Shown: positions 1 to 58,828, numbered from the stretch's first letter. The stretch is 64,000 bases of DNA from Rebecca billardiae RCC1528 (GCA_965240325.2 OZ251240.1:434001-498000), one strand, 5' to 3'. Numbers and translations are program-made. Notes: generated from the letters alone by a model not told the origin.

Positions 1-2600
1 CGCGGTGCACGCGCCCTCGCCCGCGCCCGCCGCGGCCGGCTCCGCGCCGGGCGGCGGGCAGAGCACGGCCAGCACGCGCCGGTGCACGTACGCCGCCGTC
101 TTCTCAGAGAGCGCGAGCCTGCCGGCGAAGAGCTCGCAGAAGGCGAACTGGGCGGCGTGGGCGCGCGCGGCGGCGAGGGGCGGCGGCGCGAGCGCGTACG
201 CGGCGCAGCCCGCGCCGCCCTCGGCCGCGCCCGGCCGCACGGACGGCGCCTCCGCGCCCAGCGGCAACAGCAGCCTCTTAAAGATCCGGTTGAAGGCCCA
301 CTTCTTGCCGCCGCGGCAGCCGAGCAGCTGCAGCCCGAGCAGCGCGCACGAGCCGCGCGCCGAGAGCAGCGCGGACGGCGCTGCGCTGCGCGGCGCGGGG
401 CGCTCGGGCGCGCCGCCGGGTGGCGCGCACGCCGGGGCGGACTCGGCTGGCGGCTCGGCCGGCTCGGCCTCGGGCGCGGCAGCGCACGGCCGCCACACGT
501 CGGCGAGGAGCTCGGCGCAGAGCCGTGCTGCCGCGGCCTCGCGCGCCGCGTCCGCGCGCTCGCTCAGCGTGCTTGGCACCGCGCCCGTGCCGGCCGCGCC
601 CGCGCCGGCCGGCGGCGTCGGCGGCGGCGACGCGAGCGCCGCCACCGCGCTGCGCGCGTGCTGCGTGCCCGGCGCGCCCGTGCCGGCTGCAAGCGCCCAG
701 CCTGCGCACGCGCCCAGCAGCCCGAGGCCCACCGCCTCCGCGTCTGCGAGCTCGCGCGCGCGCGCGGCGCCCTCGCGCGCCGACGCGCAGGGGCCCGCGC
801 CGCCGCCGCCGCCGCCGCCGAGCTCGGCGGCCCGCGCCGCCCACACGGCCGCCTCCTCCACCGCCGCGCACGCGAGCGCGGGCGCGAAGAGAGGCGCTGC
901 GGCCGCGCGCATCGCCGCCGGGTAGCCGAGCGCGAGCGCGCCGAGCAGAAGCGCCTCGACGCGCGGCCGGTGCCTCGCGAGGTCGTATGCGAGCACGCGC
1001 ACGCGCTGCGCGCTGAGCAGCGCGGCGCGCGGCGGCGCGCCGCCGGGCTCGGCCGCGCCGGCCGCGTCCGCGCCGGCCGCGGCCGCGTCGGCGGCGTCGG
1101 CGGCGTCGGCGGCTGCGCCCACGCCCGCGCGGCAGAGGCGCGCGTACAGCAGGCAGCGCGCCGCGTCCGCGCCGGCCGTCGGCGCCGACGGCCGCTCGGC
1201 GGCGCCGTCGGCGTCGGCGTCGGCGTCCACGCCCCCGCCCGCGCCGCCGCCCGGCGCGTGCGCCGTCGGCGCCGCGTGCGCGCGCGAGCACAGACGCGCG
1301 TGCGCCACCGCCAGCCACGCGCCCACCGCGTCCGCGCCGAGACGCAGCGTGACGCGCTCCAGGGTGGCGAGGGAGCCGCTGCCGTCGGGCGCGCCCAGCA
1401 TGCGCGCGCACGCGACGCCGCTCGAGCGCCCGAGCGCGCTCGCGCACACCGCGCCGTCGATCTCCTCGGCGAGCGCGCGCGCGCTCGGCGCGCCCGCACC
1501 GTGCGCGCGCGGCAAGCGGATGCGGCCGAGCACGCGGCCGAGCGAGGGCGCTGCGCGGGCCGAGCCGCCGCGCGCAGGGCCCGCAGCGGCGCCGGGCGCC
1601 GGCTCCGTCTCCGCCGCGCGCGAGAGCGCCGCCACGGCCGCGCCGACGGTCAGAGGCGCGGGCGCCGCCGCTGCGCCCGGCTGCGCGCCCGGCGCACGGC
1701 GCGGCGGCGCGAGGGCGGCCGAGGCGCGGCCCGCAGCCGGCGCGGGCGCACGCGCCACGCCGAGAGCGGGGCGCGCGCCGGCCGGCCGCTCGGCCTCGGC
1801 CGCGCTCTCGGCCACGCCTGCGCCACCGGCCCAGCCGCCCGCCCCGCCGCCCTCCGTGCCGCCGCCGCACTCGTTCAGATCCCCCTCCTCCTCCCCCTCC
1901 TCCTCCTCGCCCCTCCCCTGCCACGCGCGCTGCTGCCGCGCGCCAGACGCGCGCTGCTGCCGCCGCCACCCGGCCGGGCCGGCTGCGGCGCCGCCGCCCT
2001 CGTGGACGATGGCCTCGCCGAGCGTCGAGGGGGGCTCGGTGACGGTCTCGTCGCTCGCGAGCTCGACACCCTCGCCCAGGTCCGCGCCGCCGATGCTGTC
2101 CCAACCGCCGTCCAGCTGCGCGCGCGCATCAGTGTCAGCGTGCGCGAGCGCGGCTCGCGCCGGGCACACGCCAGCGGCGATGCGAGCGCGCGTGTCGGCG
2201 TGTGCGTGCAGCGGCAGCGGCGCTTCGGAGGCACCCGCCGCGGCCGAGCCCGGCGCGGAGTCGTGCATCAGCCCGGCCTCGTCCCAGTCGTGCGCGTCGT
2301 CCGCAGCGCCGAACTCGGCGGCGTGCGCCACCGCGCGACGCTTGGACGGAGGCGTGCTGCCCGGCGGCGCGGCCGCGCGCGCTCGGTCGCGCTTGGCGGC
2401 GGCGGCGGCGGCGGCGTCCGACGGCCTCGCGCTCTGCGCCACGGGCGGGTGCGGGCGCTCGGCGCCGTGGGCGCCGGACGGCGAGGCGCGCGCGGCCGGC
2501 GCCCAGCGCGCGAGGGCCGCGTGGCCGTGCCCGCTCGGCGCGTCGCGCGCCTCATCCGCGCAGGCCGTGTCTGTGCCGCGCGGCGGCGGGACGGCGGCGA

Positions 2601-11830: not shown

Positions 11831-12176
11831 TAAATTCGCGCACGTGGGCCGTGGGCACGTCGGCACCGGTGATGGCGCTGCCTGCTGTCAGTTATAGTGG
11901 GTTGTTGACCCTAGCTTTATATTATTATTACGGCTACAGGCGCTACAGCCGCTACAGCATCACGGAGCACTCCGCGCAGCCGGGACCCGCGGCGCCGAGT
12001 GGCGAGTGGCGCCGTGGCCGAGTGCCAGGCGAGTGACCTCAAGCGACCGAGACATGCCGCGAGTCGACAGACAACACTCGCCACACTGACGACAGTCCCT
12101 GCTGCCTCCCGCCGCATGGCCCTAGCCACTCCTAGTCGAAGTGCTGCCCGCCCTCGTCACCCATGGGCATGAGTAG

Positions 12177-14673
12177 TCATGGTGCCGTCGCACGGGCGGC
12201 TGACGATTCGCTCGGCGCCGGCGGTGCCGTGCTGTCGTCCGCGCCGCCGCCCCGCGCGCCGCTGCCGCCCCCCGTGAGCGCGCGCCGCTCGCGCCTGCGC
12301 TCGAGCGCATCGCGCACCCCGGCGCGCGGCTCGCCCGGCGGAGGCGGCGGCTGCACGGGTGGCGCGCTCGGCGGTTCGCCCGCCGTTGGGGTCGGCGGCG
12401 GCGGCGGCGCGGGCCCGCCCGCGGCGCGCTCTGTCGCCGCCGCCGCCTGCGCGTGTCGCGCCGCCCGGCGCGCGCGCCGCGCGCGCCCGCCCTCGAGCCC
12501 GCGCGCATAGTCGGCGCCCGCCGTGCCGGCCTCGACCAGCCGGTGCGACGGCTCGTACCAGCGCAGGTCGGGCTCGCGCGGCGGCTGCTCCTCCTCCTCG
12601 CGCCCGCGCGCGCTCCCGTAGTCAACCGGCGCGCGCGCGCGCGCGCGCAGCAGCTCGTCGCTCGGCTCGAGCGCCAGCCCGTCCGCGCCGGCGCCGGCGC
12701 GCGCGGCCGCCTCGGGCGGCGGGCGCGCGCGCTGCAGCTCGAACGGCACGGGGCGGGGCGGCGAGTGCGCGGGGCGGTGTCCGGGCTGCGCGTGCAGCAC
12801 CTCGCCCTCAGGCAAGGGGTGCGCGCGCGCCTCCTCCGCCCCGCGCGCGCCGCCTCGGCCAAAGCCCACAGCAACGGCCGCCGGGCGCGTGAGCGCATCG
12901 CTCGGCTCCAGCGCCGGCCGCACCGCCCCCACCGGCCCGGCCGCGCCGCCGTCGCCGATTCCACCGCCCGCGCCGTCGTCGTCGGCGCGGCCGGGTGCGC
13001 GAGCCATGTCGACGGGCGCGGGCGCGCGCGGCCGCGTGGGGAGGTCGTCTGAGGCGGTGGGCAGCGCGCGGCCGTCGTCCGCGTGCGCGCCGCCGGCGCC
13101 GTCCGCGCGGCCGAGCTGCATCGCCATCGGCGGCGCGCCCCGCACCGCGCGCCGCGTCGCCGCGTCCGCGTCCGCGCGCGCGTGCGGCAGCAGCGCGCCC
13201 TCGCCGGGCGGCGGCGCCGCGGCCTCTGGTGGCAGCGGCTGGCGGCCCGTCTCGCCGCCGCCGCCGAAGCTCGGCGCGGCGTGCGCGCGCTCCACCTGCG
13301 CATGCGACACGTCGAGGTGCGCCAGCGCTCCCGCCTCGAGCAGCTCGGCCGCGCCGCCGCCCGGCGCGGCCCCGCGCGCGCGCCCCGCCTCGGTCGCGAA
13401 CGCGTGCGCCGGCGCGCGCGGCCGCGTGTGCGCGTGCGCAGCGGCAAGGTCGTAGTGCGCGTGCGCCGCCTCGTCCGCCTCGGCGAGGGTGGCGTCGGCC
13501 GCGTCGCGCCCGAGCTGCAGCTCGAAGGGTACGCCGCCGCCGCCGCCGCCCGCGCGCCGCCCCTCTCCGCCGCGCCCCAGCCAGAGCAGCTCGCCAGCGC
13601 CGACGAGCGGCGGCGGCGGCGGCGCGCCCGGCGCGGCGGGCGCGAGCGCGGCCGCGCCGCCGCCGCCGTCCGAGCGCCCGCTGTGCGCGCTGCCGAAGAC
13701 GACGTTGGGCGGCGCGGGGTGGAGCAGCGCGTGCTGCGGCTCGAGCACGAGGCGCACGCCCTCCACCGCCGCCGCGCCCTCCTCCGCCCCGCCGCCACGC
13801 CCCGTCTCCGCGCGCCCGAACGCGTGCGCCTCCGCGCGCGGACGCACCGCGCCCACCGCGTGCTCATACGTGCCTGGGCCGGGAGCGGCCGCGGCGGCCG
13901 CGTCGGCGTCGAGCTCGACGAAGCGCGGCGCGGCGTGGGCGAAGCGCGAGACGCCGCGCGCCGCGCGCAGCCGCGTCGGCCGCTCATCCGGCTCGAGCCA
14001 CAGCAGCTCCGCGCCCTCGCCCAGCGCGCGCAGCAGCGCCCACACCAGCGCGCCGTCCGCGCCGAGGCCGCGCGCGGCGCCGTTGTCCGCGGCGCGCGCC
14101 GCGTCGCGCGCGCGCGCAAAGGCGTGCGCGCGCGCGTGCGACTCGACGAGCGCCCAGCGCACGCTGTACGAGAGGTCTGCGGTGAGCGGGCGCGCCGCGC
14201 CGCGCGCCGCGCGCGCCGCCATCCTCGCCCACGGCAGCACGCCGCGCGCGCGCGCCCAAGCCGCGTCGGCCGCGCCGCGCGGCGGCGGCGGCGCGAGCGC
14301 CGACAGGGCGAGGGCGGTGGCGCGCGCGCGAGAGACGGCGGCGGCGCGCGCGCGCTCGGCCTCGGCGGAGGGCCCGACGAGGCGGAAGCCCGGCACGCTC
14401 GGCCGCACCGCGCGCACCGCCGCCGCCACCTGCAGCACGAGCACGGCGCCCGCCGACGCGGCCGCGCGCGCCGCGGCCGCGCGCCTGGCCAGCACCGCCG
14501 GCGGCGCGGCCGCGCCGAGCGCGCCCGCGCCGCGGCCGCGCGCGGCCGCGGTGAGTCTGCCAAAGGGGACGCCGAGCGCGCGCGCGCCGAAGACGAGCAC
14601 GCCGAGCGCCGACGCGCCCGGCTCGCCGGCGCCGCCAAAGTACGCCCCCGGGCCTGGCGTCGCCTCCTGCGCC

Positions 14674-14705
<32 letters not shown>

Positions 14706-17121
14706 TCGAAGCATGATGGCAGCGGGCGCGCGCGGCTTGCCGTATGCGTGGTTGGGCTCAAGCAGATTCACGCCGAGGTCGTAGAGGCCCGGCTTGCGCA
14801 GCGGCGGGTGCGCGGGCCCGAGCAGCGCCGCGCGCGTCGCCATCACCGCGCCGCCGCGCACGCGCGCGCGCACCGCGTCCGCGGGCGCCGCGCGCGCGAG
14901 AGCCGCCGACAGCAGTCGGCCCAGCGCCGCGCCGTAGCGCGCGCGCAGCCGCAGCTCCGCGGCGCTGAGCGGGCGCGCGCGCGGCGCGTGCGCGGGGGCG
15001 CGGGGCGCGATGTGCCCGCCGACGCGCGCCGAGCGCTCCACCAGCGCGTACGACGGCGTGCGCATCGGCGCGCCCTCGCCGCCCTCGCCGCCCTCGCCCG
15101 CGGGGCGGGCGGGCGACGCGGCGCGCGCGGCCGCGCGGCTGAGCACAGCGCCCAGCCCGGCCGTGCGCGCGCGCGCGGTGAAGGGGGGCTCGGGCGGCGG
15201 CGCGGGGGGCGGCGGGGGCGGCGGCTCGTCGGCGCGCGGCGCGCGGGCCTCCTCGCGCCCCGTGCGCGCCGCCCACGCCGGCGCGCGCGCCTCCGCACGC
15301 AGCGCCGCGTCGGACGGCGCGTACGTGGCGGGGCCGGGTGCGCGCGCGGCCGCGGCGGCGCGCGCGCGCGCGGCGAGCGCGCGGCCGCGCGGCGCCGGCG
15401 CGGCCGCGGCGTCGGCCGACGCGTGCGCGCGGCCAAAGGTGGGCGCGGGCACGTGCTTCTCCGCGGGCAGCGCCGGCGCGCCGTACGCGCCGGGCGCGCG
15501 CCGCGCCTCCTCGCGCGCCGCCGCCTCGCGCCGCGCGGCCGCTCGCGCGTCGAGCGCCGCCGGCGGCGCAATCCGAGCGGCGGGCGCGCGCGCTCGCGTC
15601 GAGAGGGCCGCGTCCGCCGGCGCGTCGAGGAGGGCGGTGGAGGCGTCGGAGGCGTCGGTCATCGCGGAGGGCGAGCGGAGCAGCGCCGCCTCCGCCGCCG
15701 CCGCCGCGCGCTCCAGCGCCAGCTCGCGCGCACGCGGCGCCACCTCGCGCTTCGCCTTGGGCCACGCGCCGCCGCGCGAGCGGAGCGCCGCGTCCTCGGC
15801 CGAGCCGGCGCTGCCCGCGCTGCGGCTGCTGCGCACGCTGCTGCCGCCGGCGGAGAGCGCGCTGGTGCTCGCGAGCGCGGGGGCGCGCGGCTCCGGCGCG
15901 AAGCGCGCCGCGCGCCCCATCGCGCCGCCGAGCACGCGGCGCTCCACCTGCGCAAACGACGCCGCCTCCTCCCCCTCCCCCTCAGATGCAGAGGACCGCA
16001 GCTCGGATGCGCCAGAGCCCGCTCCCGGCTCTGATGCCGCCGGCGAGGCGGAGCGCGAGCGGCGCGCGCTGCGAGGGCGCGGCGCGCCGATCGAGTACGC
16101 GGGCGCCACGCGGCGCACAAAGTGCAGCGGCGGCGGCGTGCCCGCCTCGGCCACGGCGTCAGGCGGGCGCGCGGGCGGCGCGCGGCCGCGCAGCGCGGGC
16201 GCGCGCGCAGCCGTCCTCAGAGCGTCCGCGGGCGCCGCCGGCCCGAGCCGCTCCGCCGCGTGCGCCGCGCCGAGGCCGCGCTTGTGCCGCGCGCTGCCGA
16301 GCCGCCGCCGCGCCGCCGCAGACGCCTCCGACTCCGACGGCGGGGCGATGCGCGCGGCGGCCGAGCGCGGGCGCACAGCCCCGTCCCGAGGCGCGCCGTA
16401 CTCGCCCGGGCCGGGCGCGCGCGCCGCCGCCGCCGCGCGCCGCAGCTCCGCCGAGCTCGGCGGCGCGGCCGGCGGCGCGATGCGCGCCGAGAGCACGCGC
16501 GGGCGCACCGCGTCCACGCGCGGCTCGAGCTCGCTCACCGGCTGCTCCTCCGCACCACGCCGCGGCTCGCCGAGGCGCGAGGTGTCGCGCACCTCTCGGC
16601 CAAAGTGAGCCGCTGGCCGGCTCGTGCGCACCGCCGCGTCCGCCTCGGCGACGCGGAGCGGCTCGCCGCCGCTCGCCGGCGGGAGGCGCGAGGGCGCGTC
16701 GTCGCGCTCCGCCCGGCCAAACGGCCCGCCCGCCGGCGCGCACCGACCGCCGAAGCCGTTCATCAACGCGAGCACGTCCGCGCCCGGGCCGAGGCCGGAG
16801 GCAGGCGGCTCGCGCGACGGCGCGTCGTCGCGCTCGGCGCGGCCGAAGGGGCCGCCGGCGGGCACGCGCCGGCTCGGACCGCTCATCAGGGCGCTCACGT
16901 CCACGCCAGGATCGCCCGTCGCCGCGGGATCGCGCGACGGCGCGTCGTCGCGCTCGGCACGCGCAAACGGGCCGCCCGGCGGCCGGCGGTCCGTGGGCGC
17001 GCACGCGCACGGCGCTGAGCGCGGCCCCCGCAGGCAGCAGCAGCAGCACGCCGTGGCAAAATCCGAGCCGAAGAGATCATCGATCGACGGCAGCGCCGCC
17101 GAGGCGAGCGTCTCCACGTGC
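12177..17121 (-). CDS. Large Ala/Arg/Pro-rich protein with SHIPPO/sperm-tail PG-rich repeats (ODF3/STPG-like, probably axonemal)
   Basis: Long ORF with repeated PGPGxY motifs (APGPGEY, APGPATY, TPGPGAY, APGPGTY), recurring FGR/GR motifs and three N-terminal GGPFxRAERDDAPSR repeats. Start codon and possible short introns are uncertain. Confidence 0.7.
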
Positions 17122-19622: not shown

Positions 19623-20935
19623 TGGCGGGCCGTAGGTCCGCCCCTTGTAGTGCCCGGGAAAAAGATAAGAAAAAGATCAGAAAAAGAAAATCCTCGCCAA
19701 GAAAAGAAAATCGCCTCGCTCACTACCGGGCGCCCTCGCAGCTCCCACTGGGGACGCTCGGCCGAAAACCATCTGGCGCCTGGCGCGGAGCGCGTGGGCG
19801 GCGCGCGCCGAATCCAACGCCAGCGCGGACATCGTGAGAGGACTCCCGAACGGTGTTTTCGCCCGATTCGCGATTGCTGCCCTCGTCGTCTCGCGTGCAG
19901 GTCGAACGAGGGCCAAAGTCGACGCGTTTGGAGGTACGCTCGGCGCGTCGACACGATCGTGCGACCTGGGGCGGTCCTCGCCCGACTTGCACGTCGAGCG
20001 CTCGCATGAGCCATAGCATCAAGCGCTGCGCACGATGGCCGCCTCGCTCGATTCACCGTCGCGCGTCGGGCTCGGTGCGGAAAGGCCCTCATCACGAGGT
20101 GTCTCGCGGGCGGGAAGCGCCATCCCACGCGACGCAAGATTTGGCGCGGCCTTCTGAACACCATAACCGGAATCCACACACCGGACTATGTATCCAGGTG
20201 CCCCGGTTGGCAAGGTCGGGCGCATGCAAATCCGTTTGCTACGGTCGGTGGCGTTGTCCGGCCTGCATGGCGTCGACGGTGGCCAATGCGACGGAGGGGC
20301 AGCGCAAAGCGGCGTACGACGCGCACTGCACGCACCTGCTGGGTCTGCCGCCGTGGCAGGAATCGCGTCTTCGCGAGTCGGCGACTGAGGCGACAGCGCG
20401 CTATCACCGATCCCAGATGCGCACTGTCCGCGACGAGATGAAACGTCGCGCGTGCAGAATCGCCGCCCCATCCTCCACCATGGCACGGGCGCTGCGGGAC
20501 GAGGCCGACGTCGTGAAGCCGGTGACGCATGCGCTGCGCTTCCTGTGCCTGCTCGAGCAGCGCGTGCCCACCCTCGATCGCGAGTGGCACACGCTCTCGC
20601 ACTGCGCGCGCGCGCACCACCAACAGCTCCTGATACCGCCGAACGTGCGAGTGCCGGACCTGTCGCACGGAGCGGCGAGCGCCGACGAACGCTTGGACCT
20701 GGGCGCGCTGTTGCGCAGCGTGGCGGCCGTGCACGACGCCGACGCGACCTTCGCCGAACCTCGTGCCCGGAGCGGACATTGGCATCCTCGCGACACACGA
20801 TCTCAGCTGGCGGCAGGAGGAGATGCTCTTTCGTCATCCTGCCCGTAAACACGCTAAAAGGCGCGAACCCGCTGGGGAAATATTGCGACAGCACTGGCAC
20901 GGCCCGCCGACCCCCCCGCCCGCCAGGGCACAGTT
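19623..20935 (+). mobile_element. Non-autonomous ~1.3-kb element 'R', copy 1 (no TSD, terminal hairpin; rolling-circle/Helitron-like?)
   Basis: Near-identical to 20950-22271 and homologous to the inverted copy at 55992-57464. Terminal hairpin ggcgggcc-gta-ggtccgcc. Confidence 0.75.
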
Positions 20936-44854: not shown

Positions 44855-46040
44855 TCAGTAGCTAAAGTTGAAGCCGACTGTGAGGTGCACCACGACCGAG
44901 CCTGCCGCCAGCAGCAGCAGCACATACAGCAGCGTCTTCCACAGGTCGGCGGAGCGCGCCTTCATCTCCTCGAGCGTCTCCTCGCGAGGCTCGCCGCCGC
45001 GCTCCTCGGGCGTCGGCGGCAAGCCCGGCGCGCGCGCCTTGCTCGGGCTGGCGAACTGGCAGCGTGCGCGCGCGCAGGGCGTGCACACGCAGCAGCATGG
45101 AGGTGGCGGGCGCGGGGGGGGAGCGGTGTGCGCGTGAGCGCCTGGCAGGGCGAGCCAACGCATGTGGGCACGCGCGCGCGCGCGCGCCCGCACGTCAGTA
45201 TCGACCGCGCGATCGCAGATGCTCTCCGCCTTCCTCTCGAGCGCCTCGCACGTGCGCTCGGCGTGCCTCTCCTGGCATTTGCACTCGCCCGTGAGCCACT
45301 CGATGAACGCGGTCTGCGAGCGGCCCATCGCGAGGTAGAGGCCGAGGAGCTGCACGGGCGTGGGCGTCTGCTTCGGTGTGGCCTCACCCATCTTCGCCTT
45401 CATGCGCCGCTGCACCCTGGGGATCGACGCCTCGCCGATGCCCGGCACCACACTGCGCACGCCGGGAACGGGGCGGGTGCGCACGCTCTCGTGAGCACGG
45501 CGGCAGCGGGGCGCGCAGAGGGACAGCGCGCTGTGACGCGCACCCGGGCGTGAGCTTGGTCATGGATAGCCGCATGCGCTCAAAGTTCTCGAAGACGGTG
45601 GTCGTGCTGCCGTCCGCTTTCTTCGCCGGGCTCGTGTCGTGCTTGGCGTCCGTGCAGTAATCGTGCGACTTCGCCTCGAGCGCGAGCGCGATCTTCTCGG
45701 CGTAGCTGCGCGCGGGGCGCGGCGGCGGTGGATATAAAAAGCGGCGAATGCGCGCGCACGCCTAAGCACCGCGTTCGTGCTGCGCGCGCCGCGCGTGCAT
45801 GCCCGCGCACCGCTTCTGCACGTCCGTCGCGACGAGGAAGGAAATGAATGCGTCGTTGTTACGGTTCAGCAGCAAGTAGTAGCCCATGAGCGCGACGGCC
45901 GAGGTGATCTCGCGCTTGATGAGCTTGTCGCATGTGATCTTGCCCGCCCCTGGCAAGATGCCCGGCGCGAGGAGCTCGGACGACAGTGGCGACCTCTGGA
46001 AGGTCTCGAATACGGCCGTCGGCAGCTCGGTCTGCGCCAT
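44855..46040 (-). CDS. Tandem BAF-like (barrier-to-autointegration factor) domain protein with C-terminal TM anchor, 283 aa; exons 46040-45811, 45705-45544, 45452-45194, 45055-44855
   Basis: Three GT..AG introns give a continuous 852-nt frame. Two mutually similar domains carry (L/V)PG(A/I)G(K/E), L(M/L)GxYL and AFI(S/E)(F/W)L motifs, resembling BAF LAGIGE..VLGQFLVL..FREWL. Terminal hydrophobic helix LLYVLLLLAAGSVVVHLTVGF. Confidence 0.8.
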
Positions 46041-46250: not shown

Positions 46251-47834
46251 ATGGTTGACGCCCGCCCCCTTCCCGCCAGGGGGAAACAGCTTGAGAAGCT
46301 GCTCTTCGACTGCCTCGACGTCGCACGCCTGCGCCACGAGCTGAGTTTTGCTCAGGTGCTTATCCCTAAAGGCGCCCGCAAGTGTGAGCTGGCTCATCTG
46401 CTCGCGTGCGCGCTCTCCGGTGCTGCGACGGATGCGGTGCCCAGCACGCCGAGCAGCGCGCACGGAAAGGCGCCCGCGAGGCAGCCGGCCCGCACGAGCA
46501 GGCCCAGAGCGTGTATCGTCGACAGCGGCAGCGATGATGACGCGGAGATGATCACACCTGCGGCCACTGCACTGGCGCGCCGGCGGCAGCGCAGGCGCCT
46601 GCGCAGTCGTCGTGCGTGTGATGACGCCACTCAGGAGGCGGAGGCGGAGGTGGCGGAGGAGGCGGAGGAGGTGGAGGAGCAGGAGGAGGCGGAGGCGCAG
46701 GAGGTTGGCGCCATCAGCCACAGACGGCGCACGCGCGGTCGCCGCATCGTGGACGACAGCAGCGACGATGACGACGGCGGCATCGACCCGCCTGCGCACG
46801 CCGCGGCGCGGCCCAGGCGCACGCGTGCAGACACCAACGGCGGTGGCTTGAAGCGTGACGCCATGCAGCCTGCCGGCCGGCGCCGTCTGCGCCGCCGCCT
46901 CTTTGAGGACAGCGAGAACGACGGCGACGCGAGCGCCCGCGCAAACGCAGCGCGCTCCAAGCGCGGCACTCGCGAGGCGCCCGCACGGAAGCGTCGTGCG
47001 ACGACTGCTGAGCCCGATCCGGCCGAGCCGGTGGGCGGCGGCGACTCGAGCAGCCCCGCGCGTGCCGACAGCGAGGGCGGCGCGGACACCGAGGGCAGCA
47101 CAGAGCCGGAGAGCAGCCATGCAGACTCGGATTACGTGTGCAGCGACTCCGAGGGCGCGGTGACGGCCACCGAGGACGAGGAGGAGGAGGAGGACGAGGA
47201 GGAGGAGGAGGACGAGGAGGCGGCGAGTGCCAGCTCTGAGCTCGGCTCCTGCGGCACCGACTCCGACTCCGACTCCGGGTCCGAACGGAGTGAACCGCAA
47301 GGCGGGAGGCTCTGGTGCTCCTGCTGCCTCCAGGCGTGCCCTGTCGACAACTTCTCGCGCGCGCAGCAGCGCGAGGAGGAGGACGCCGAGCGCTTCTGTC
47401 TGAAGCACACCTCCACCTCGGCCTTCAACGCGCGCGCGGTCACGCGCAACCCCTCCCTGTCCACGGACGGCAGCCAGGCGCACGAGGACCCGCCGCACCC
47501 GCTCTCCCCGGACGAAACCGACGACACGGGCTCCGACGGGCGGGGCGAGGAGGAGGACAGCGTGGGCGGCACGCCTGGCGATGCGAGCAAACACGGCGGA
47601 CCAGCTGCCGGGCCTCATGCCCCGCTGCCCGAGGACGAGGTGATCAACTTTGGCGAGTTCCGCGGCAAGGCGCGCTTCAGCGACATTGCCTCCGAACGGC
47701 GGCAGGGGCACCGACTGTCGCGGTACCGCCGTTACATTCTCGAGCAGAGACCGCCGTTCTTTGCGGCACAGCTTCCCCGGTTCCAAGCATACCTGAATGC
47801 CGTTGCCGCTGGCAGAGCAGTGAGCGGATCCTGA
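46251..47834 (+). CDS. Putative nuclear protein (527 aa): N-terminal HeH/LEM-like domain, basic and acidic disordered tracts, Stc1-like zinc finger, C-terminal FGxxRGK motif
   Basis: LDVARLRHELSFAQVLIPKGARKCELAHLL, NLS-like Arg/Lys clusters, poly-E/D tract, CSCCLQACPVDNFSRAQQ..FCLKH and INFGEFRGK. Confidence 0.7.
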   Translation: MVDARPLPARGKQLEKLLFDCLDVARLRHELSFAQVLIPKGARKCELAHLLACALSGAATDAVPSTPSSAHGKAPARQPARTSRPRACIVDSGSDDDAEMITPAATALARRRQRRRLRSRRACDDATQEAEAEVAEEAEEVEEQEEAEAQEVGAISHRRRTRGRRIVDDSSDDDDGGIDPPAHAAARPRRTRADTNGGGLKRDAMQPAGRRRLRRRLFEDSENDGDASARANAARSKRGTREAPARKRRATTAEPDPAEPVGGGDSSSPARADSEGGADTEGSTEPESSHADSDYVCSDSEGAVTATEDEEEEEDEEEEEDEEAASASSELGSCGTDSDSDSGSERSEPQGGRLWCSCCLQACPVDNFSRAQQREEEDAERFCLKHTSTSAFNARAVTRNPSLSTDGSQAHEDPPHPLSPDETDDTGSDGRGEEEDSVGGTPGDASKHGGPAAGPHAPLPEDEVINFGEFRGKARFSDIASERRQGHRLSRYRRYILEQRPPFFAAQLPRFQAYLNAVAAGRAVSGS

Positions 47835-58705: not shown

Positions 58706-58828
58706 AAATCTGCTTTCTGTATCGGGTGGCATTCGGTGCGGGCCATTGCCAAGGGCTGCCGCCATGGATAGGCGCAGATCATCGCGGCCACGCGAGGTTT
58801 CCGAGGAGCCACCGTCATGTCGCAGACG
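58706..58828 (-). promoter_or_regulatory. Candidate SECIS element in the msrA 3' UTR
   Basis: AUGAC (from 58818) opposite CGAU (58724-58721). Helix GGUGGC/GCCACC plus UCGG/CCGA, then unpaired AAA (58800-58798). Basal helix GUCUGC/GCAGAU. Confidence 0.65.

What the first reader, a model, noticed from the sequence alone, without database searches (positions are those of the whole stretch)
44855..46040. Single-chain pseudo-dimeric BAF with a tail anchor, hidden by three introns
Seen: the spliced 283-aa product has repeat 1 TAVFETFQRSPL..ILPGAGK..LMGYYLLLNRNNDAFISFL..YAEKIALALEAKSHDYC and repeat 2 TTVFENFERMRL..VVPGIGE..LLGLYLAMGRSQTAFIEWL..C..HAERTCEALERKAESIC, then a ~20-residue hydrophobic C-terminus. 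The ORF track never shows the whole protein. Established: BAF is an ~89-aa soluble homodimer best known from animals, with roles in nuclear assembly and defence against viral or foreign DNA. I know of no characterised tandem membrane-anchored form (unverified).
Basis: partly seen in the sequence, partly recalled or inferred. Interest (0 to 1): 0.8.

Follow-up and report, generated by a model that had tools for sequence, protein, structure and literature searches.

The report
Membrane-anchored double BAF protein in an alga
A real four-exon gene of a GC-rich, probably haptophyte, alga encodes two copies of the animal chromatin-bridging protein BAF joined in one chain and ending in a membrane anchor. 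It belongs to a conserved but unstudied protist family that may tie DNA directly to the nuclear envelope.

Summary
On the minus strand, four exons (46040-45811, 45705-45544, 45452-45194, 45055-44855) add up to 852 nt, which is 283 aa plus stop. All three introns begin GTGCG and end CAG. GC3 is 0.91-0.93 in every exon and flat in every intron.

The exon peptides tile colinearly onto full-length relatives, and intron positions are shared with two of them. One is Diacronema lutheri KAG8458476.1 (283 aa, "hypothetical protein"); another has an MMETSP transcript.

Both repeats are BAF domains:
- Pfam SAM_BAF scores 21 and 23 bits on the split pieces and 46-54 bits on the three closest full-length relatives.
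- A profile of the relatives hits human BAF at E 5e-9.
- An AF2 model of the D. lutheri module (pLDDT 89.7, pTM 0.87) matches human BAF at Z 15, rmsd 1.5 Å.

The hydrophobic tail is conserved in about 18 sequence clusters, which include four haptophyte genera. Other protists carry N-terminally anchored or soluble tandem BAFs, apparently from separate duplications.

So the architecture is real but not unique. I found no paper describing it. The pseudo-dimer geometry, DNA binding and nuclear-envelope location remain inferred.

The scan also noted this same stretch in a second note, and another BAF-like gene elsewhere in this genome.

The parts
45811..46040 (-). Exon 1 (aa 1-76 plus 2 nt of codon 77): start codon and most of BAF repeat 1 (helix 1 to helix 4, HhH hairpin PGAGK)
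   Evidence: Translation. GC3 0.91. Pfam SAM_BAF 21.1 bits, profile positions 23-65. All seven PDB sequence hits are BAF. 49% identity to exon 1 of the relative L005, E 1e-22.
45706..45810 (-). Intron 1, 105 nt, GTGCGC...CAG, phase 2 (splits codon R77)
   Evidence: Flat GC and an in-frame stop in the exon-1 reading frame. An intron sits at the same position in D. lutheri (after aa 75) and in L005.
45544..45705 (-). Exon 2 (aa 77-131 with split codons): last helix of repeat 1 (YAEKIALALEAKSHDYC), a 16-aa linker (45606-45653), and the TTT motif plus helix 1 of repeat 2
   Evidence: Translation. GC3 0.93. Matches to the exon 1 N-terminus and the exon 3 C-terminus. Tiles onto the orthologues.
45453..45543 (-). 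Intron 2, 91 nt, GTGCGC...CAG, phase 2 (splits codon G131)
   Evidence: Not a multiple of 3 and flat GC. The spliced reading LTPG-VVPGIGE mirrors LAPG-ILPGAGK of repeat 1. L005 has an intron at the same position and phase, and the MMETSP transcript P0063 lacks it.
45194..45452 (-). Exon 3 (aa 131-217): rest of BAF repeat 2 (HhH hairpin PGIGE, an 11-aa basic insertion RRMKAKMGEAT, helices 3-5)
   Evidence: Translation. GC3 0.92. Pfam SAM_BAF 23.4 bits, profile positions 43-83. 54% identity to P0063, E 5e-32. Falls in the repeat-2 clade of the C-anchored proteins, support 95/81.
45056..45193 (-). Intron 3, 138 nt, GTGCGG...CAG, phase 0, in frame and free of stops
   Evidence: No codon periodicity (GC 0.78-0.82 at all positions). 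The 46 codons are absent from every relative. Exon 3 ends at P0063 residue 167 and exon 4 starts at residue 168. D. lutheri has an intron at the same position.
44855..45055 (-). Exon 4 (aa 218-283 plus TGA): about 40 aa of Pro/Glu-rich spacer, then the membrane anchor and a 4-aa end
   Evidence: Translation. GC3 0.91. E 6e-10 to P0063 residues 168-237.
44870..44935 (-). Predicted transmembrane tail anchor TLLYVLLLLAAGSVVVHLTVGF (aa 258-279), followed by NFSY
   Evidence: Kyte-Doolittle 19-residue maximum 2.36. A C-terminal hydrophobic segment lies within 1-27 residues of the end in P0003, P0004, P0005, P0009, P0013, P0017-P0020, P0029, P0060, P0086, P0088-P0092 and P0096.

Best explanation
The locus is a functional four-exon gene for a 283-aa tail-anchored protein. 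Its cytosolic/nucleoplasmic part is two BAF (barrier-to-autointegration factor) domains in one chain.

Shown: the gene model, the BAF identity of both repeats, the conserved C-terminal hydrophobic anchor, and membership of a conserved protist family (haptophytes and unnamed marine eukaryotes).

Inferred:
- The two domains pack against each other as a covalent equivalent of the obligate BAF homodimer. That would give one molecule two helix-hairpin-helix DNA-binding faces.
- The tail is inserted post-translationally into the ER membrane (GET-type route, as for emerin).
- The roughly 28-kDa exposed part can pass the pore membrane to the inner nuclear membrane and is retained there by binding DNA.
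- The protein would then tie chromatin directly to the nuclear envelope. One polypeptide would do what animals do with soluble BAF plus a tail-anchored LEM protein.
- A conserved Thr-Thr motif just before repeat 2 aligns with the human T3/S4 phosphosites. It could allow release from DNA at division.
For: Gene model.

Colinear tiling of the four exon peptides on D. lutheri KAG8458476.1 and two others.

Intron positions and phases are shared with D. lutheri (introns 1 and 3) and with L005 (introns 1 and 2). The MMETSP transcript P0063 lacks intron 2 and has no insertion at junction 3.

BAF identity:
- Pfam on the exon pieces; language-model neighbours, 16 of 20 SAM_BAF.
- Local profile of Pfam-verified single-domain BAFs: E 6e-18 and 3e-15.
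- Closest full-length relatives 46-54 bits against a cut-off of 25.
- Profile of the relatives against human BAF: E 5e-9, all 7 hits BAF.
- AF2 of P0003:1-222: pLDDT 89.7, pTM 0.87.
- Foldseek top 8 hits are human BAF, TM 0.86-0.89, rmsd 1.5 Å.
- VIA-align Z 14.3-15.0 over 85-88 residues, next fold Z 6.
- In the Atlas's own model, residues 2-92 and 109-212 each match BAF-like clusters, TM 0.85 and 0.71.

Rigid two-domain unit: pTM 0.87.

Residues: the equivalents of human G25/G27 (essential for DNA binding) and L46/G47 (buried at the dimer interface; PMC2173821) are kept in both repeats.

Recurrence: tandem BAFs arose several times, and membrane anchors occur at either end. That fits a functional unit made of a dimer on a membrane.

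Emerin precedent for a tail-anchored inner-nuclear-membrane protein: PMC3810338.

TT motif aligned to human T3/S4.
Against: - There is no expression or localisation data for this organism.
- The fold and pTM come from the D. lutheri orthologue (39-45% identical across the BAF exons), not from the window protein.
- I had no coordinates, so the packing of the two domains was not compared with the BAF homodimer.
- The equivalent of human K6 (essential for DNA binding) is Val in both repeats, and R75 is Glu in repeat 2. DNA affinity may therefore differ.
- A very hydrophobic tail with no basic end predicts the ER, not specifically the inner nuclear membrane.
- Repeat 2 carries an 11-aa insertion in the second HhH helix, with unknown effect.
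Confidence: 0.55

Rival explanations
1. Same protein, but it works on the cytosolic face of the ER or outer nuclear membrane as a barrier to foreign DNA. It would coat or cross-bridge the DNA of giant viruses that replicate in the cytoplasm, as soluble BAF does with vaccinia DNA in animal cells.
For: A tail anchor first places the BAF module on the cytosolic side. BAF restricts vaccinia replication (PMC12724269 abstract). Haptophytes are hosts of large DNA viruses (my own knowledge). D. lutheri has three neighbouring copies, a pattern often seen in defence genes. BAF-like Atlas clusters include viral members.
Against: No viral relative turned up in the viral-contig scan. The family keeps one conserved architecture and old, separate repeat-1 and repeat-2 lineages, not the rapid turnover typical of defence genes. 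Nothing here distinguishes the two faces of the envelope.
Confidence: 0.15
2. The BAF fold has been re-used as a membrane-bound protein-binding scaffold, for example for histones or a lamina-like protein, with little or no direct DNA binding.
For: The equivalent of K6 is Val in both repeats, and R75 is Glu in repeat 2. Human BAF also binds histones, lamins and LEM domains (PMC3198171). The 'valley' residue K53 is not kept, while K54 is Arg in both repeats.
Against: The Gly-x-Gly hairpin of the HhH motif, needed for DNA binding in human BAF, is conserved in both repeats and across most relatives. Repeat 2 adds a basic insertion.
Confidence: 0.12
3. The model is wrong: two separate short genes, a pseudogene, or a chance run of ORFs.
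For: No transcript evidence from this organism. Each exon piece alone is under the Pfam cut-off.
Against: Strong codon periodicity in all four exons only. Exact colinear tiling on 283-291-aa relatives. Conserved intron positions and phases. Each BAF domain is complete only after splicing.
Confidence: 0.03

Closest known systems
Animal BAF / BANF1 (Pfam PF02961 SAM_BAF; PDB 1CI4, 2BZF, 6GHD)
   Same: Same five-helix fold with an HhH hairpin (Z 15, rmsd 1.5 Å for repeat 1 of the orthologue). The Gly-x-Gly hairpin, the L46/G47 equivalents and W62/aromatic are kept. A Thr-Thr motif aligns with the T3/S4 phosphosites.
   Different: Two domains in one chain instead of an 89-aa homodimer. A C-terminal membrane anchor instead of a soluble protein. 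K6 is not kept. Repeat 2 has an 11-aa basic insertion. It occurs in algae, where the literature treats the BAF-LEM tether as restricted to animals (PMC5630835).
[quoted passage not shown]
   Same: [quoted passage not shown] Emerin has a 23-residue segment plus 11 residues (PMC3810338); this protein has 22 plus 4.
   Different: There is no LEM domain. The DNA-binding partner (BAF) itself is fused to the anchor, so no adaptor step is needed. There is no sequence relationship.
Diacronema lutheri KAG8458476.1 (A0A8J5X4Z0, hypothetical protein KFE25_004354) and relatives in Chrysochromulina tobinii (Ctob_012718), Emiliania huxleyi (EMIHUDRAFT_257739 fragment) and Tisochrysis lutea (EP00967 transcript)
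   Same: Same BAF-BAF-spacer-tail architecture and the same length (283 aa in D. lutheri). Two of three intron positions are shared.
   Different: Only 26-45% identity per exon to the D. lutheri protein. D. lutheri has three neighbouring copies, whereas the window has one. None has been studied.
N-terminally anchored and soluble tandem BAFs of unnamed marine protists (P0011, P0012, P0023, P0024, P0030, P0043; P0010, P0014, P0025, P0037, P0052, P0054, P0058)
   Same: Two BAF domains in one chain, often with one membrane segment.
   Different: The anchor is at the other end or absent. The domain tree places their two repeats together, which points to separate duplications.

Membership tests
BAF family (Pfam PF02961 SAM_BAF) | Sequence match to the family profile at or above the curated cut-off (25 bits) | tested here: inconclusive
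The window pieces score 21.1 bits (exon 1) and 23.4 bits (exon 3). Each is the only hit and each covers a partial domain. The three closest full-length relatives score 54, 46 and 49 bits. The window ORFs hit a profile of Pfam-verified single-domain BAFs at E 6e-18 and 3e-15.
BAF family (Pfam PF02961 SAM_BAF) | Five-helix BAF fold of about 89 residues | tested here: met
   Tested on the D. lutheri orthologue, not on the window protein. AF2 gives pLDDT 89.7. Repeat 1 matches human BAF at Z 14.3-15.0, rmsd 1.5-1.9 Å, 85-88 residues. Repeat 2 (109-212) matches a BAF-like Atlas cluster at TM 0.71. AF2 on window exon 1 alone was unusable (pLDDT 49).
BAF family (Pfam PF02961 SAM_BAF) | HhH hairpin with the two glycines (human G25, G27) needed for DNA binding | tested here: met
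   PGAGK in repeat 1 and PGIGE in repeat 2 align with human AGIGE. Their role in human BAF is described in PMC2173821.
BAF family (Pfam PF02961 SAM_BAF) | Dimeric functional unit with L46/G47 buried at the interface | tested here: inconclusive
   The equivalents M52/G53 (repeat 1) and L/G (repeat 2) are kept, and the Gly is invariant in alignment A4. pTM 0.87 indicates a fixed two-domain arrangement. That arrangement was not compared with the homodimer.
BAF family (Pfam PF02961 SAM_BAF) | Sequence-independent dsDNA binding and bridging; LEM-domain binding | not testable with these tools
   This needs biochemistry. The K6 equivalent is Val. K53 is not kept, and K54 is Arg.
Tail-anchored membrane proteins | No N-terminal signal sequence and a single hydrophobic segment within about 30-40 residues of the C-terminus | tested here: met
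   The N-terminus MAQTELPTAVFETFQRS is not hydrophobic. There is one segment at aa 258-279 with hydropathy 2.36 and 4 residues after it. It is conserved in relatives. Hydropathy only; no dedicated predictor was available.
Tail-anchored membrane proteins | Post-translational insertion (GET/TRC40) and the target membrane | not testable with these tools
   Inferred from the emerin precedent (PMC3810338).
LEM/HeH-BAF pair (as suggested for the neighbouring gene by another first-stage note) | A LEM or HeH domain in the divergent neighbour (46251-47834) | tested here: not met
   No Pfam family at E<=1. No LEM or HeH chain among the PDB sequence hits for the first 80 aa. It is not a neighbour of the D. 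lutheri orthologue. Sequence methods only, so a fold-level match is not excluded.

The most novel reading that the evidence does not exclude
Haptophytes and other marine protists attach chromatin to the nuclear envelope with a one-protein BAF tether, a covalent BAF dimer carrying its own membrane anchor. If so, BAF-based envelope-chromatin coupling is neither an animal invention nor dependent on LEM proteins. It would also have been reached several times through separate tandem duplications and anchors at either end.
Probability: 0.35. Interest if true: 0.75.

Novelty: new variant of a known kind. Interest (0 to 1): 0.6.

Why it matters
Reviews of nuclear-envelope evolution treat BAF, and the BAF-LEM link between chromatin and the inner nuclear membrane, as features of animals (PMC5630835, PMC3198171, PMC2173821).

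This gene and its roughly 18 related clusters show three things:
- BAF domains are common in algae and other protists.
- They are often fused head to tail.
- They are often bolted to a membrane.

That offers a simple, testable candidate for how organisms without LEM proteins hold chromatin at the envelope or rebuild the envelope after division. It also provides a natural single-chain BAF dimer for structural and DNA-bridging work. In addition, it exposes an annotation gap: Emiliania huxleyi's reference annotation holds only a 64-aa fragment of its family member.

Tried and rejected
Searches and tests that gave nothing useful:
- Word-index protein searches with the 209-aa ORF and with exon 1 found only the window's own ORFs.
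- Metagenome and viral contig scans with the two-repeat alignment found no relative.
- No RNA run could be listed for the locus.
- The Logan contigs holding the ORFs are colinear with the genome, introns included. They say nothing about splicing.
- AF2 on exon 1 with a two-row alignment gave pLDDT 49 and was not searched.
- The two-repeat profile against PDB sequences was weak (E 0.23). phmmer of P0003 alone against the PDB found nothing.
- The Atlas shape search with the two-domain model found no cluster above TM 0.37 by the model.
- Rfam found nothing in the window.
- There is no paralogue in the window, and no synteny with the D. lutheri locus beyond the gene itself.
- Paper searches for PF02961 and for 'tandem BAF' or 'BAF domains' gave nothing relevant.
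- PMC4333761 (Brachner and Foisner) is not held.

Rejected: intron 3 as a retained coding insert. It has no codon periodicity and is absent from all relatives.

Rejected on sequence evidence: the neighbouring gene as a LEM/HeH partner.

Full report
**1. Observation**

- The exons are 46040-45811, 45705-45544, 45452-45194 and 45055-44855. They total 852 nt, which is 283 codons plus TGA.
- The three introns are 105, 91 and 138 nt. They begin GTGCGC, GTGCGC and GTGCGG, and all end CAG.
- The ORF list shows only a 108-aa piece (exon 1 with read-through) and a 209-aa piece.
- The 209-aa piece is exon 3, intron 3 and exon 4 read in one frame. The hydrophobic end is therefore tied to repeat 2 whatever happens at intron 3.

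**2. Is the gene model real?**

Three independent lines of evidence say yes.

*Composition.* GC3 is 0.91-0.93 and GC2 0.42-0.50 in each exon in the model frame. Each intron is flat, at 0.71-0.86 at all positions. A frame-blind periodicity scan of 40-50 kb recovers the same four blocks.

*Repeat register.*
- Exon 1 matches exon 3 (E 2e-6).
- The end of exon 2 matches the start of exon 1 (E 2e-4).
- The start of exon 2 matches the end of exon 3 (E 0.005).
- Each repeat is therefore completed only by splicing.
- The split codon at junction 2 gives Gly. LTPG-VVPGIGE then mirrors LAPG-ILPGAGK of repeat 1.

*Relatives.*
- The four exon peptides tile colinearly, without overlap, on three full-length proteins of 283-291 aa.
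- The D. lutheri gene (L004:10001-11300) has introns at the positions of window introns 1 and 3.
- A closer relative (L005, 49-54% identical) has introns at the positions and phases of window introns 1 and 2, and none at 3.
- The MMETSP transcript P0063 of that relative lacks intron 2. It runs straight through the equivalent of junction 3: exon 3 ends at its residue 167 and exon 4 starts at 168.

No RNA run could be listed for this organism. The only public contigs holding the ORFs are unspliced DNA.

**3. What the repeats are**

Evidence from the window pieces:
- Exons 1 and 3 each hit only Pfam SAM_BAF (21.1 and 23.4 bits, E 4e-4 and 9e-5). They fall just under the 25-bit cut-off because each holds part of a domain.
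- All seven PDB sequence hits of exon 1 are BAF.
- Sixteen of its 20 language-model neighbours are SAM_BAF clusters.

Finding relatives:
- The word searches found nothing, and the claim rests on the absence of relatives. I therefore ran the exhaustive search, using an alignment of exons 1 and 3 as homologous repeats.
- It returned 61 proteins, many of 220-340 aa with two matched stretches.

Evidence from the relatives:
- The three closest full-length relatives score 46-54 bits on SAM_BAF; the D. lutheri one has two stretches. More distant C-anchored members score 22-38 bits.
- Nine of ten single-domain hits are Pfam BAFs. A profile built from these single-domain hits matches the window's two ORFs at E 6e-18 and 3e-15.
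- A profile of 29 relatives hits human BAF at E 5e-9 over nearly its full length. No other PDB family appears.

**4. Fold**

I folded the tandem module of the D. lutheri orthologue (P0003:1-222) with a 47-row family alignment instead.
- The model has mean pLDDT 89.7 and pTM 0.87.
- The Foldseek top eight hits are human BAF (TM by target 0.86-0.89, rmsd 1.5 Å). After them there is a drop to E>1.
- VIA-align gives Z 14.3-15.0 over 85-88 residues for model residues 4-92. The next fold scores Z 6.
- In the ESM Atlas's own model of the same protein, residues 2-92 match a BAF cluster (TM 0.85). Residues 109-212 match a BAF-like cluster (TM 0.71).

Both domains therefore have the BAF fold in the orthologue.

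A pTM of 0.87 for two domains joined by a low-confidence linker argues for a fixed mutual arrangement. I had no coordinates, so I could not test whether it copies the BAF homodimer.

**5. Residues**

Using the printed alignments and the mutational map of human BAF (PMC2173821):
- The hairpin glycines G25/G27, essential for DNA binding, are kept in both repeats.
- L46/G47, buried at the dimer interface, are M/G in repeat 1 and L/G in repeat 2. The Gly is invariant in the family.
- K54 is Arg in both repeats.
- K6 is Val, K53 is not kept, and R75 is Glu in repeat 2.
- The Thr-Thr just before repeat 2, conserved in the family consensus, aligns with human T3/S4. Ser4 is a site where VRK1 phosphorylation regulates chromatin association (PMC13443024).
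- Repeat 2 carries an 11-aa basic insertion in the second HhH helix. In the orthologue model this is a longer helix (138-152).

**6. The tail**

- Residues 258-279 (TLLYVLLLLAAGSVVVHLTVGF) have a hydropathy of 2.36 and are followed by four residues.
- The N-terminus is not signal-like.
- The same kind of C-terminal segment, 1-27 residues from the end, occurs in about 18 distinct clusters.

**7. The family**

Named members:
- Diacronema lutheri KAG8458476.1
- a Tisochrysis lutea transcript
- Chrysochromulina tobinii Ctob_012718
- an Emiliania huxleyi cluster whose reference annotation is a 64-aa fragment

All are 'hypothetical'.

Other points:
- One cluster sits on a compact algal contig beside Brr2 and a PAP-fibrillin gene.
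- Other protists have tandem BAFs with an N-terminal membrane segment, or with none.
- In a domain tree (short alignment, modest resolution), the repeat-2 domains of the C-anchored proteins, including window exon 3, form a supported clade (95/81) apart from their repeat-1 domains.
- In four other groups the two repeats cluster with each other. That implies several separate duplications, or concerted evolution.
- Repeated arrival at a covalent pair is what one expects if the working unit is a dimer.

**8. Mechanism**

The best reading (0.55) is a membrane-tethered covalent BAF dimer. It would be inserted as a tail-anchored protein and retained at the inner nuclear membrane by DNA binding. BAF and its LEM partner would thus be merged into one chain, with emerin as the precedent for the route (PMC3810338).

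Rivals:
- a cytosol-facing barrier to viral DNA (0.15)
- a protein-binding scaffold without DNA binding (0.12)
- a wrong gene model (0.03)

**9. Novelty**

The architecture is real and conserved, but not unique to this genome, and it is already present in databases as unnamed proteins. I found no paper on it. Reviews describe BAF tethering as restricted to animals. I file it as a new variant of a known kind.

**10. Context and limits**

- The divergent neighbour (46251-47834) has no Pfam or PDB-sequence support as a LEM/HeH protein. It is not conserved next to the D. lutheri orthologue.
- The organism is probably a haptophyte related to Pavlovales. This rests on the closest relatives and shared introns, and agrees with other agents' notes. 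It is not D. lutheri itself.
- The scan also holds another first-stage note on this same stretch, and one on a different BAF-like gene with a CaaX tail elsewhere in this genome. I could not read that DNA.

Noticed in passing
window 46251-47834 (+): The divergent neighbour, 210 bp from the BAF gene's start, was proposed elsewhere as HeH/LEM plus Stc1-like. It has no Pfam family at E<=1, and its first 80 aa give no LEM/HeH hit among PDB sequences. Codon periodicity is clear only at 47080-47560. It is not a neighbour of the D. lutheri orthologue.
   Followed up: partly
L004 10001-11300, about 15498-16600, about 20153-20289 (D. lutheri JAGTXO010000051.1): D. lutheri carries three neighbouring copies or part-copies of the gene (KFE25_004354, _004350, _004348). 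The window has a single copy.
   Followed up: partly
P0011, P0012, P0023, P0024, P0030, P0043 (metagenome and transcriptome proteins): These are tandem BAF proteins with the membrane segment at the N-terminus instead of the C-terminus. Their two repeats group together in the domain tree, which suggests a separate duplication.
   Followed up: partly
P0108 / P0091 cluster (Emiliania huxleyi EMIHUDRAFT_257739): The E. huxleyi CCMP1516 reference annotation holds only a 64-aa fragment of a 315-347-aa member of this family.
   Followed up: no
window 1-2000 and 12001-16000: These blocks have extreme GC (0.82-0.85) and very long ORFs on both strands. They remain unexplained.
   Followed up: no
L003 5334-6329 (ENA contig k119_47977): An intron-free 331-aa family member lies on a gene-dense algal contig, directly after a Brr2-type helicase gene and near a PAP-fibrillin gene. 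The lineage was not identified.
   Followed up: no
window, whole: Rfam finds nothing at gathering thresholds in the 64 kb. That includes the place where another note reports a SECIS-like element (58706-58828).
   Followed up: no
P0028 (582 aa), P0093 (C. tobinii, 342 aa): These are larger relatives. One has two BAF domains and a membrane segment at residue 430. The other has three BAF-like stretches.
   Followed up: no
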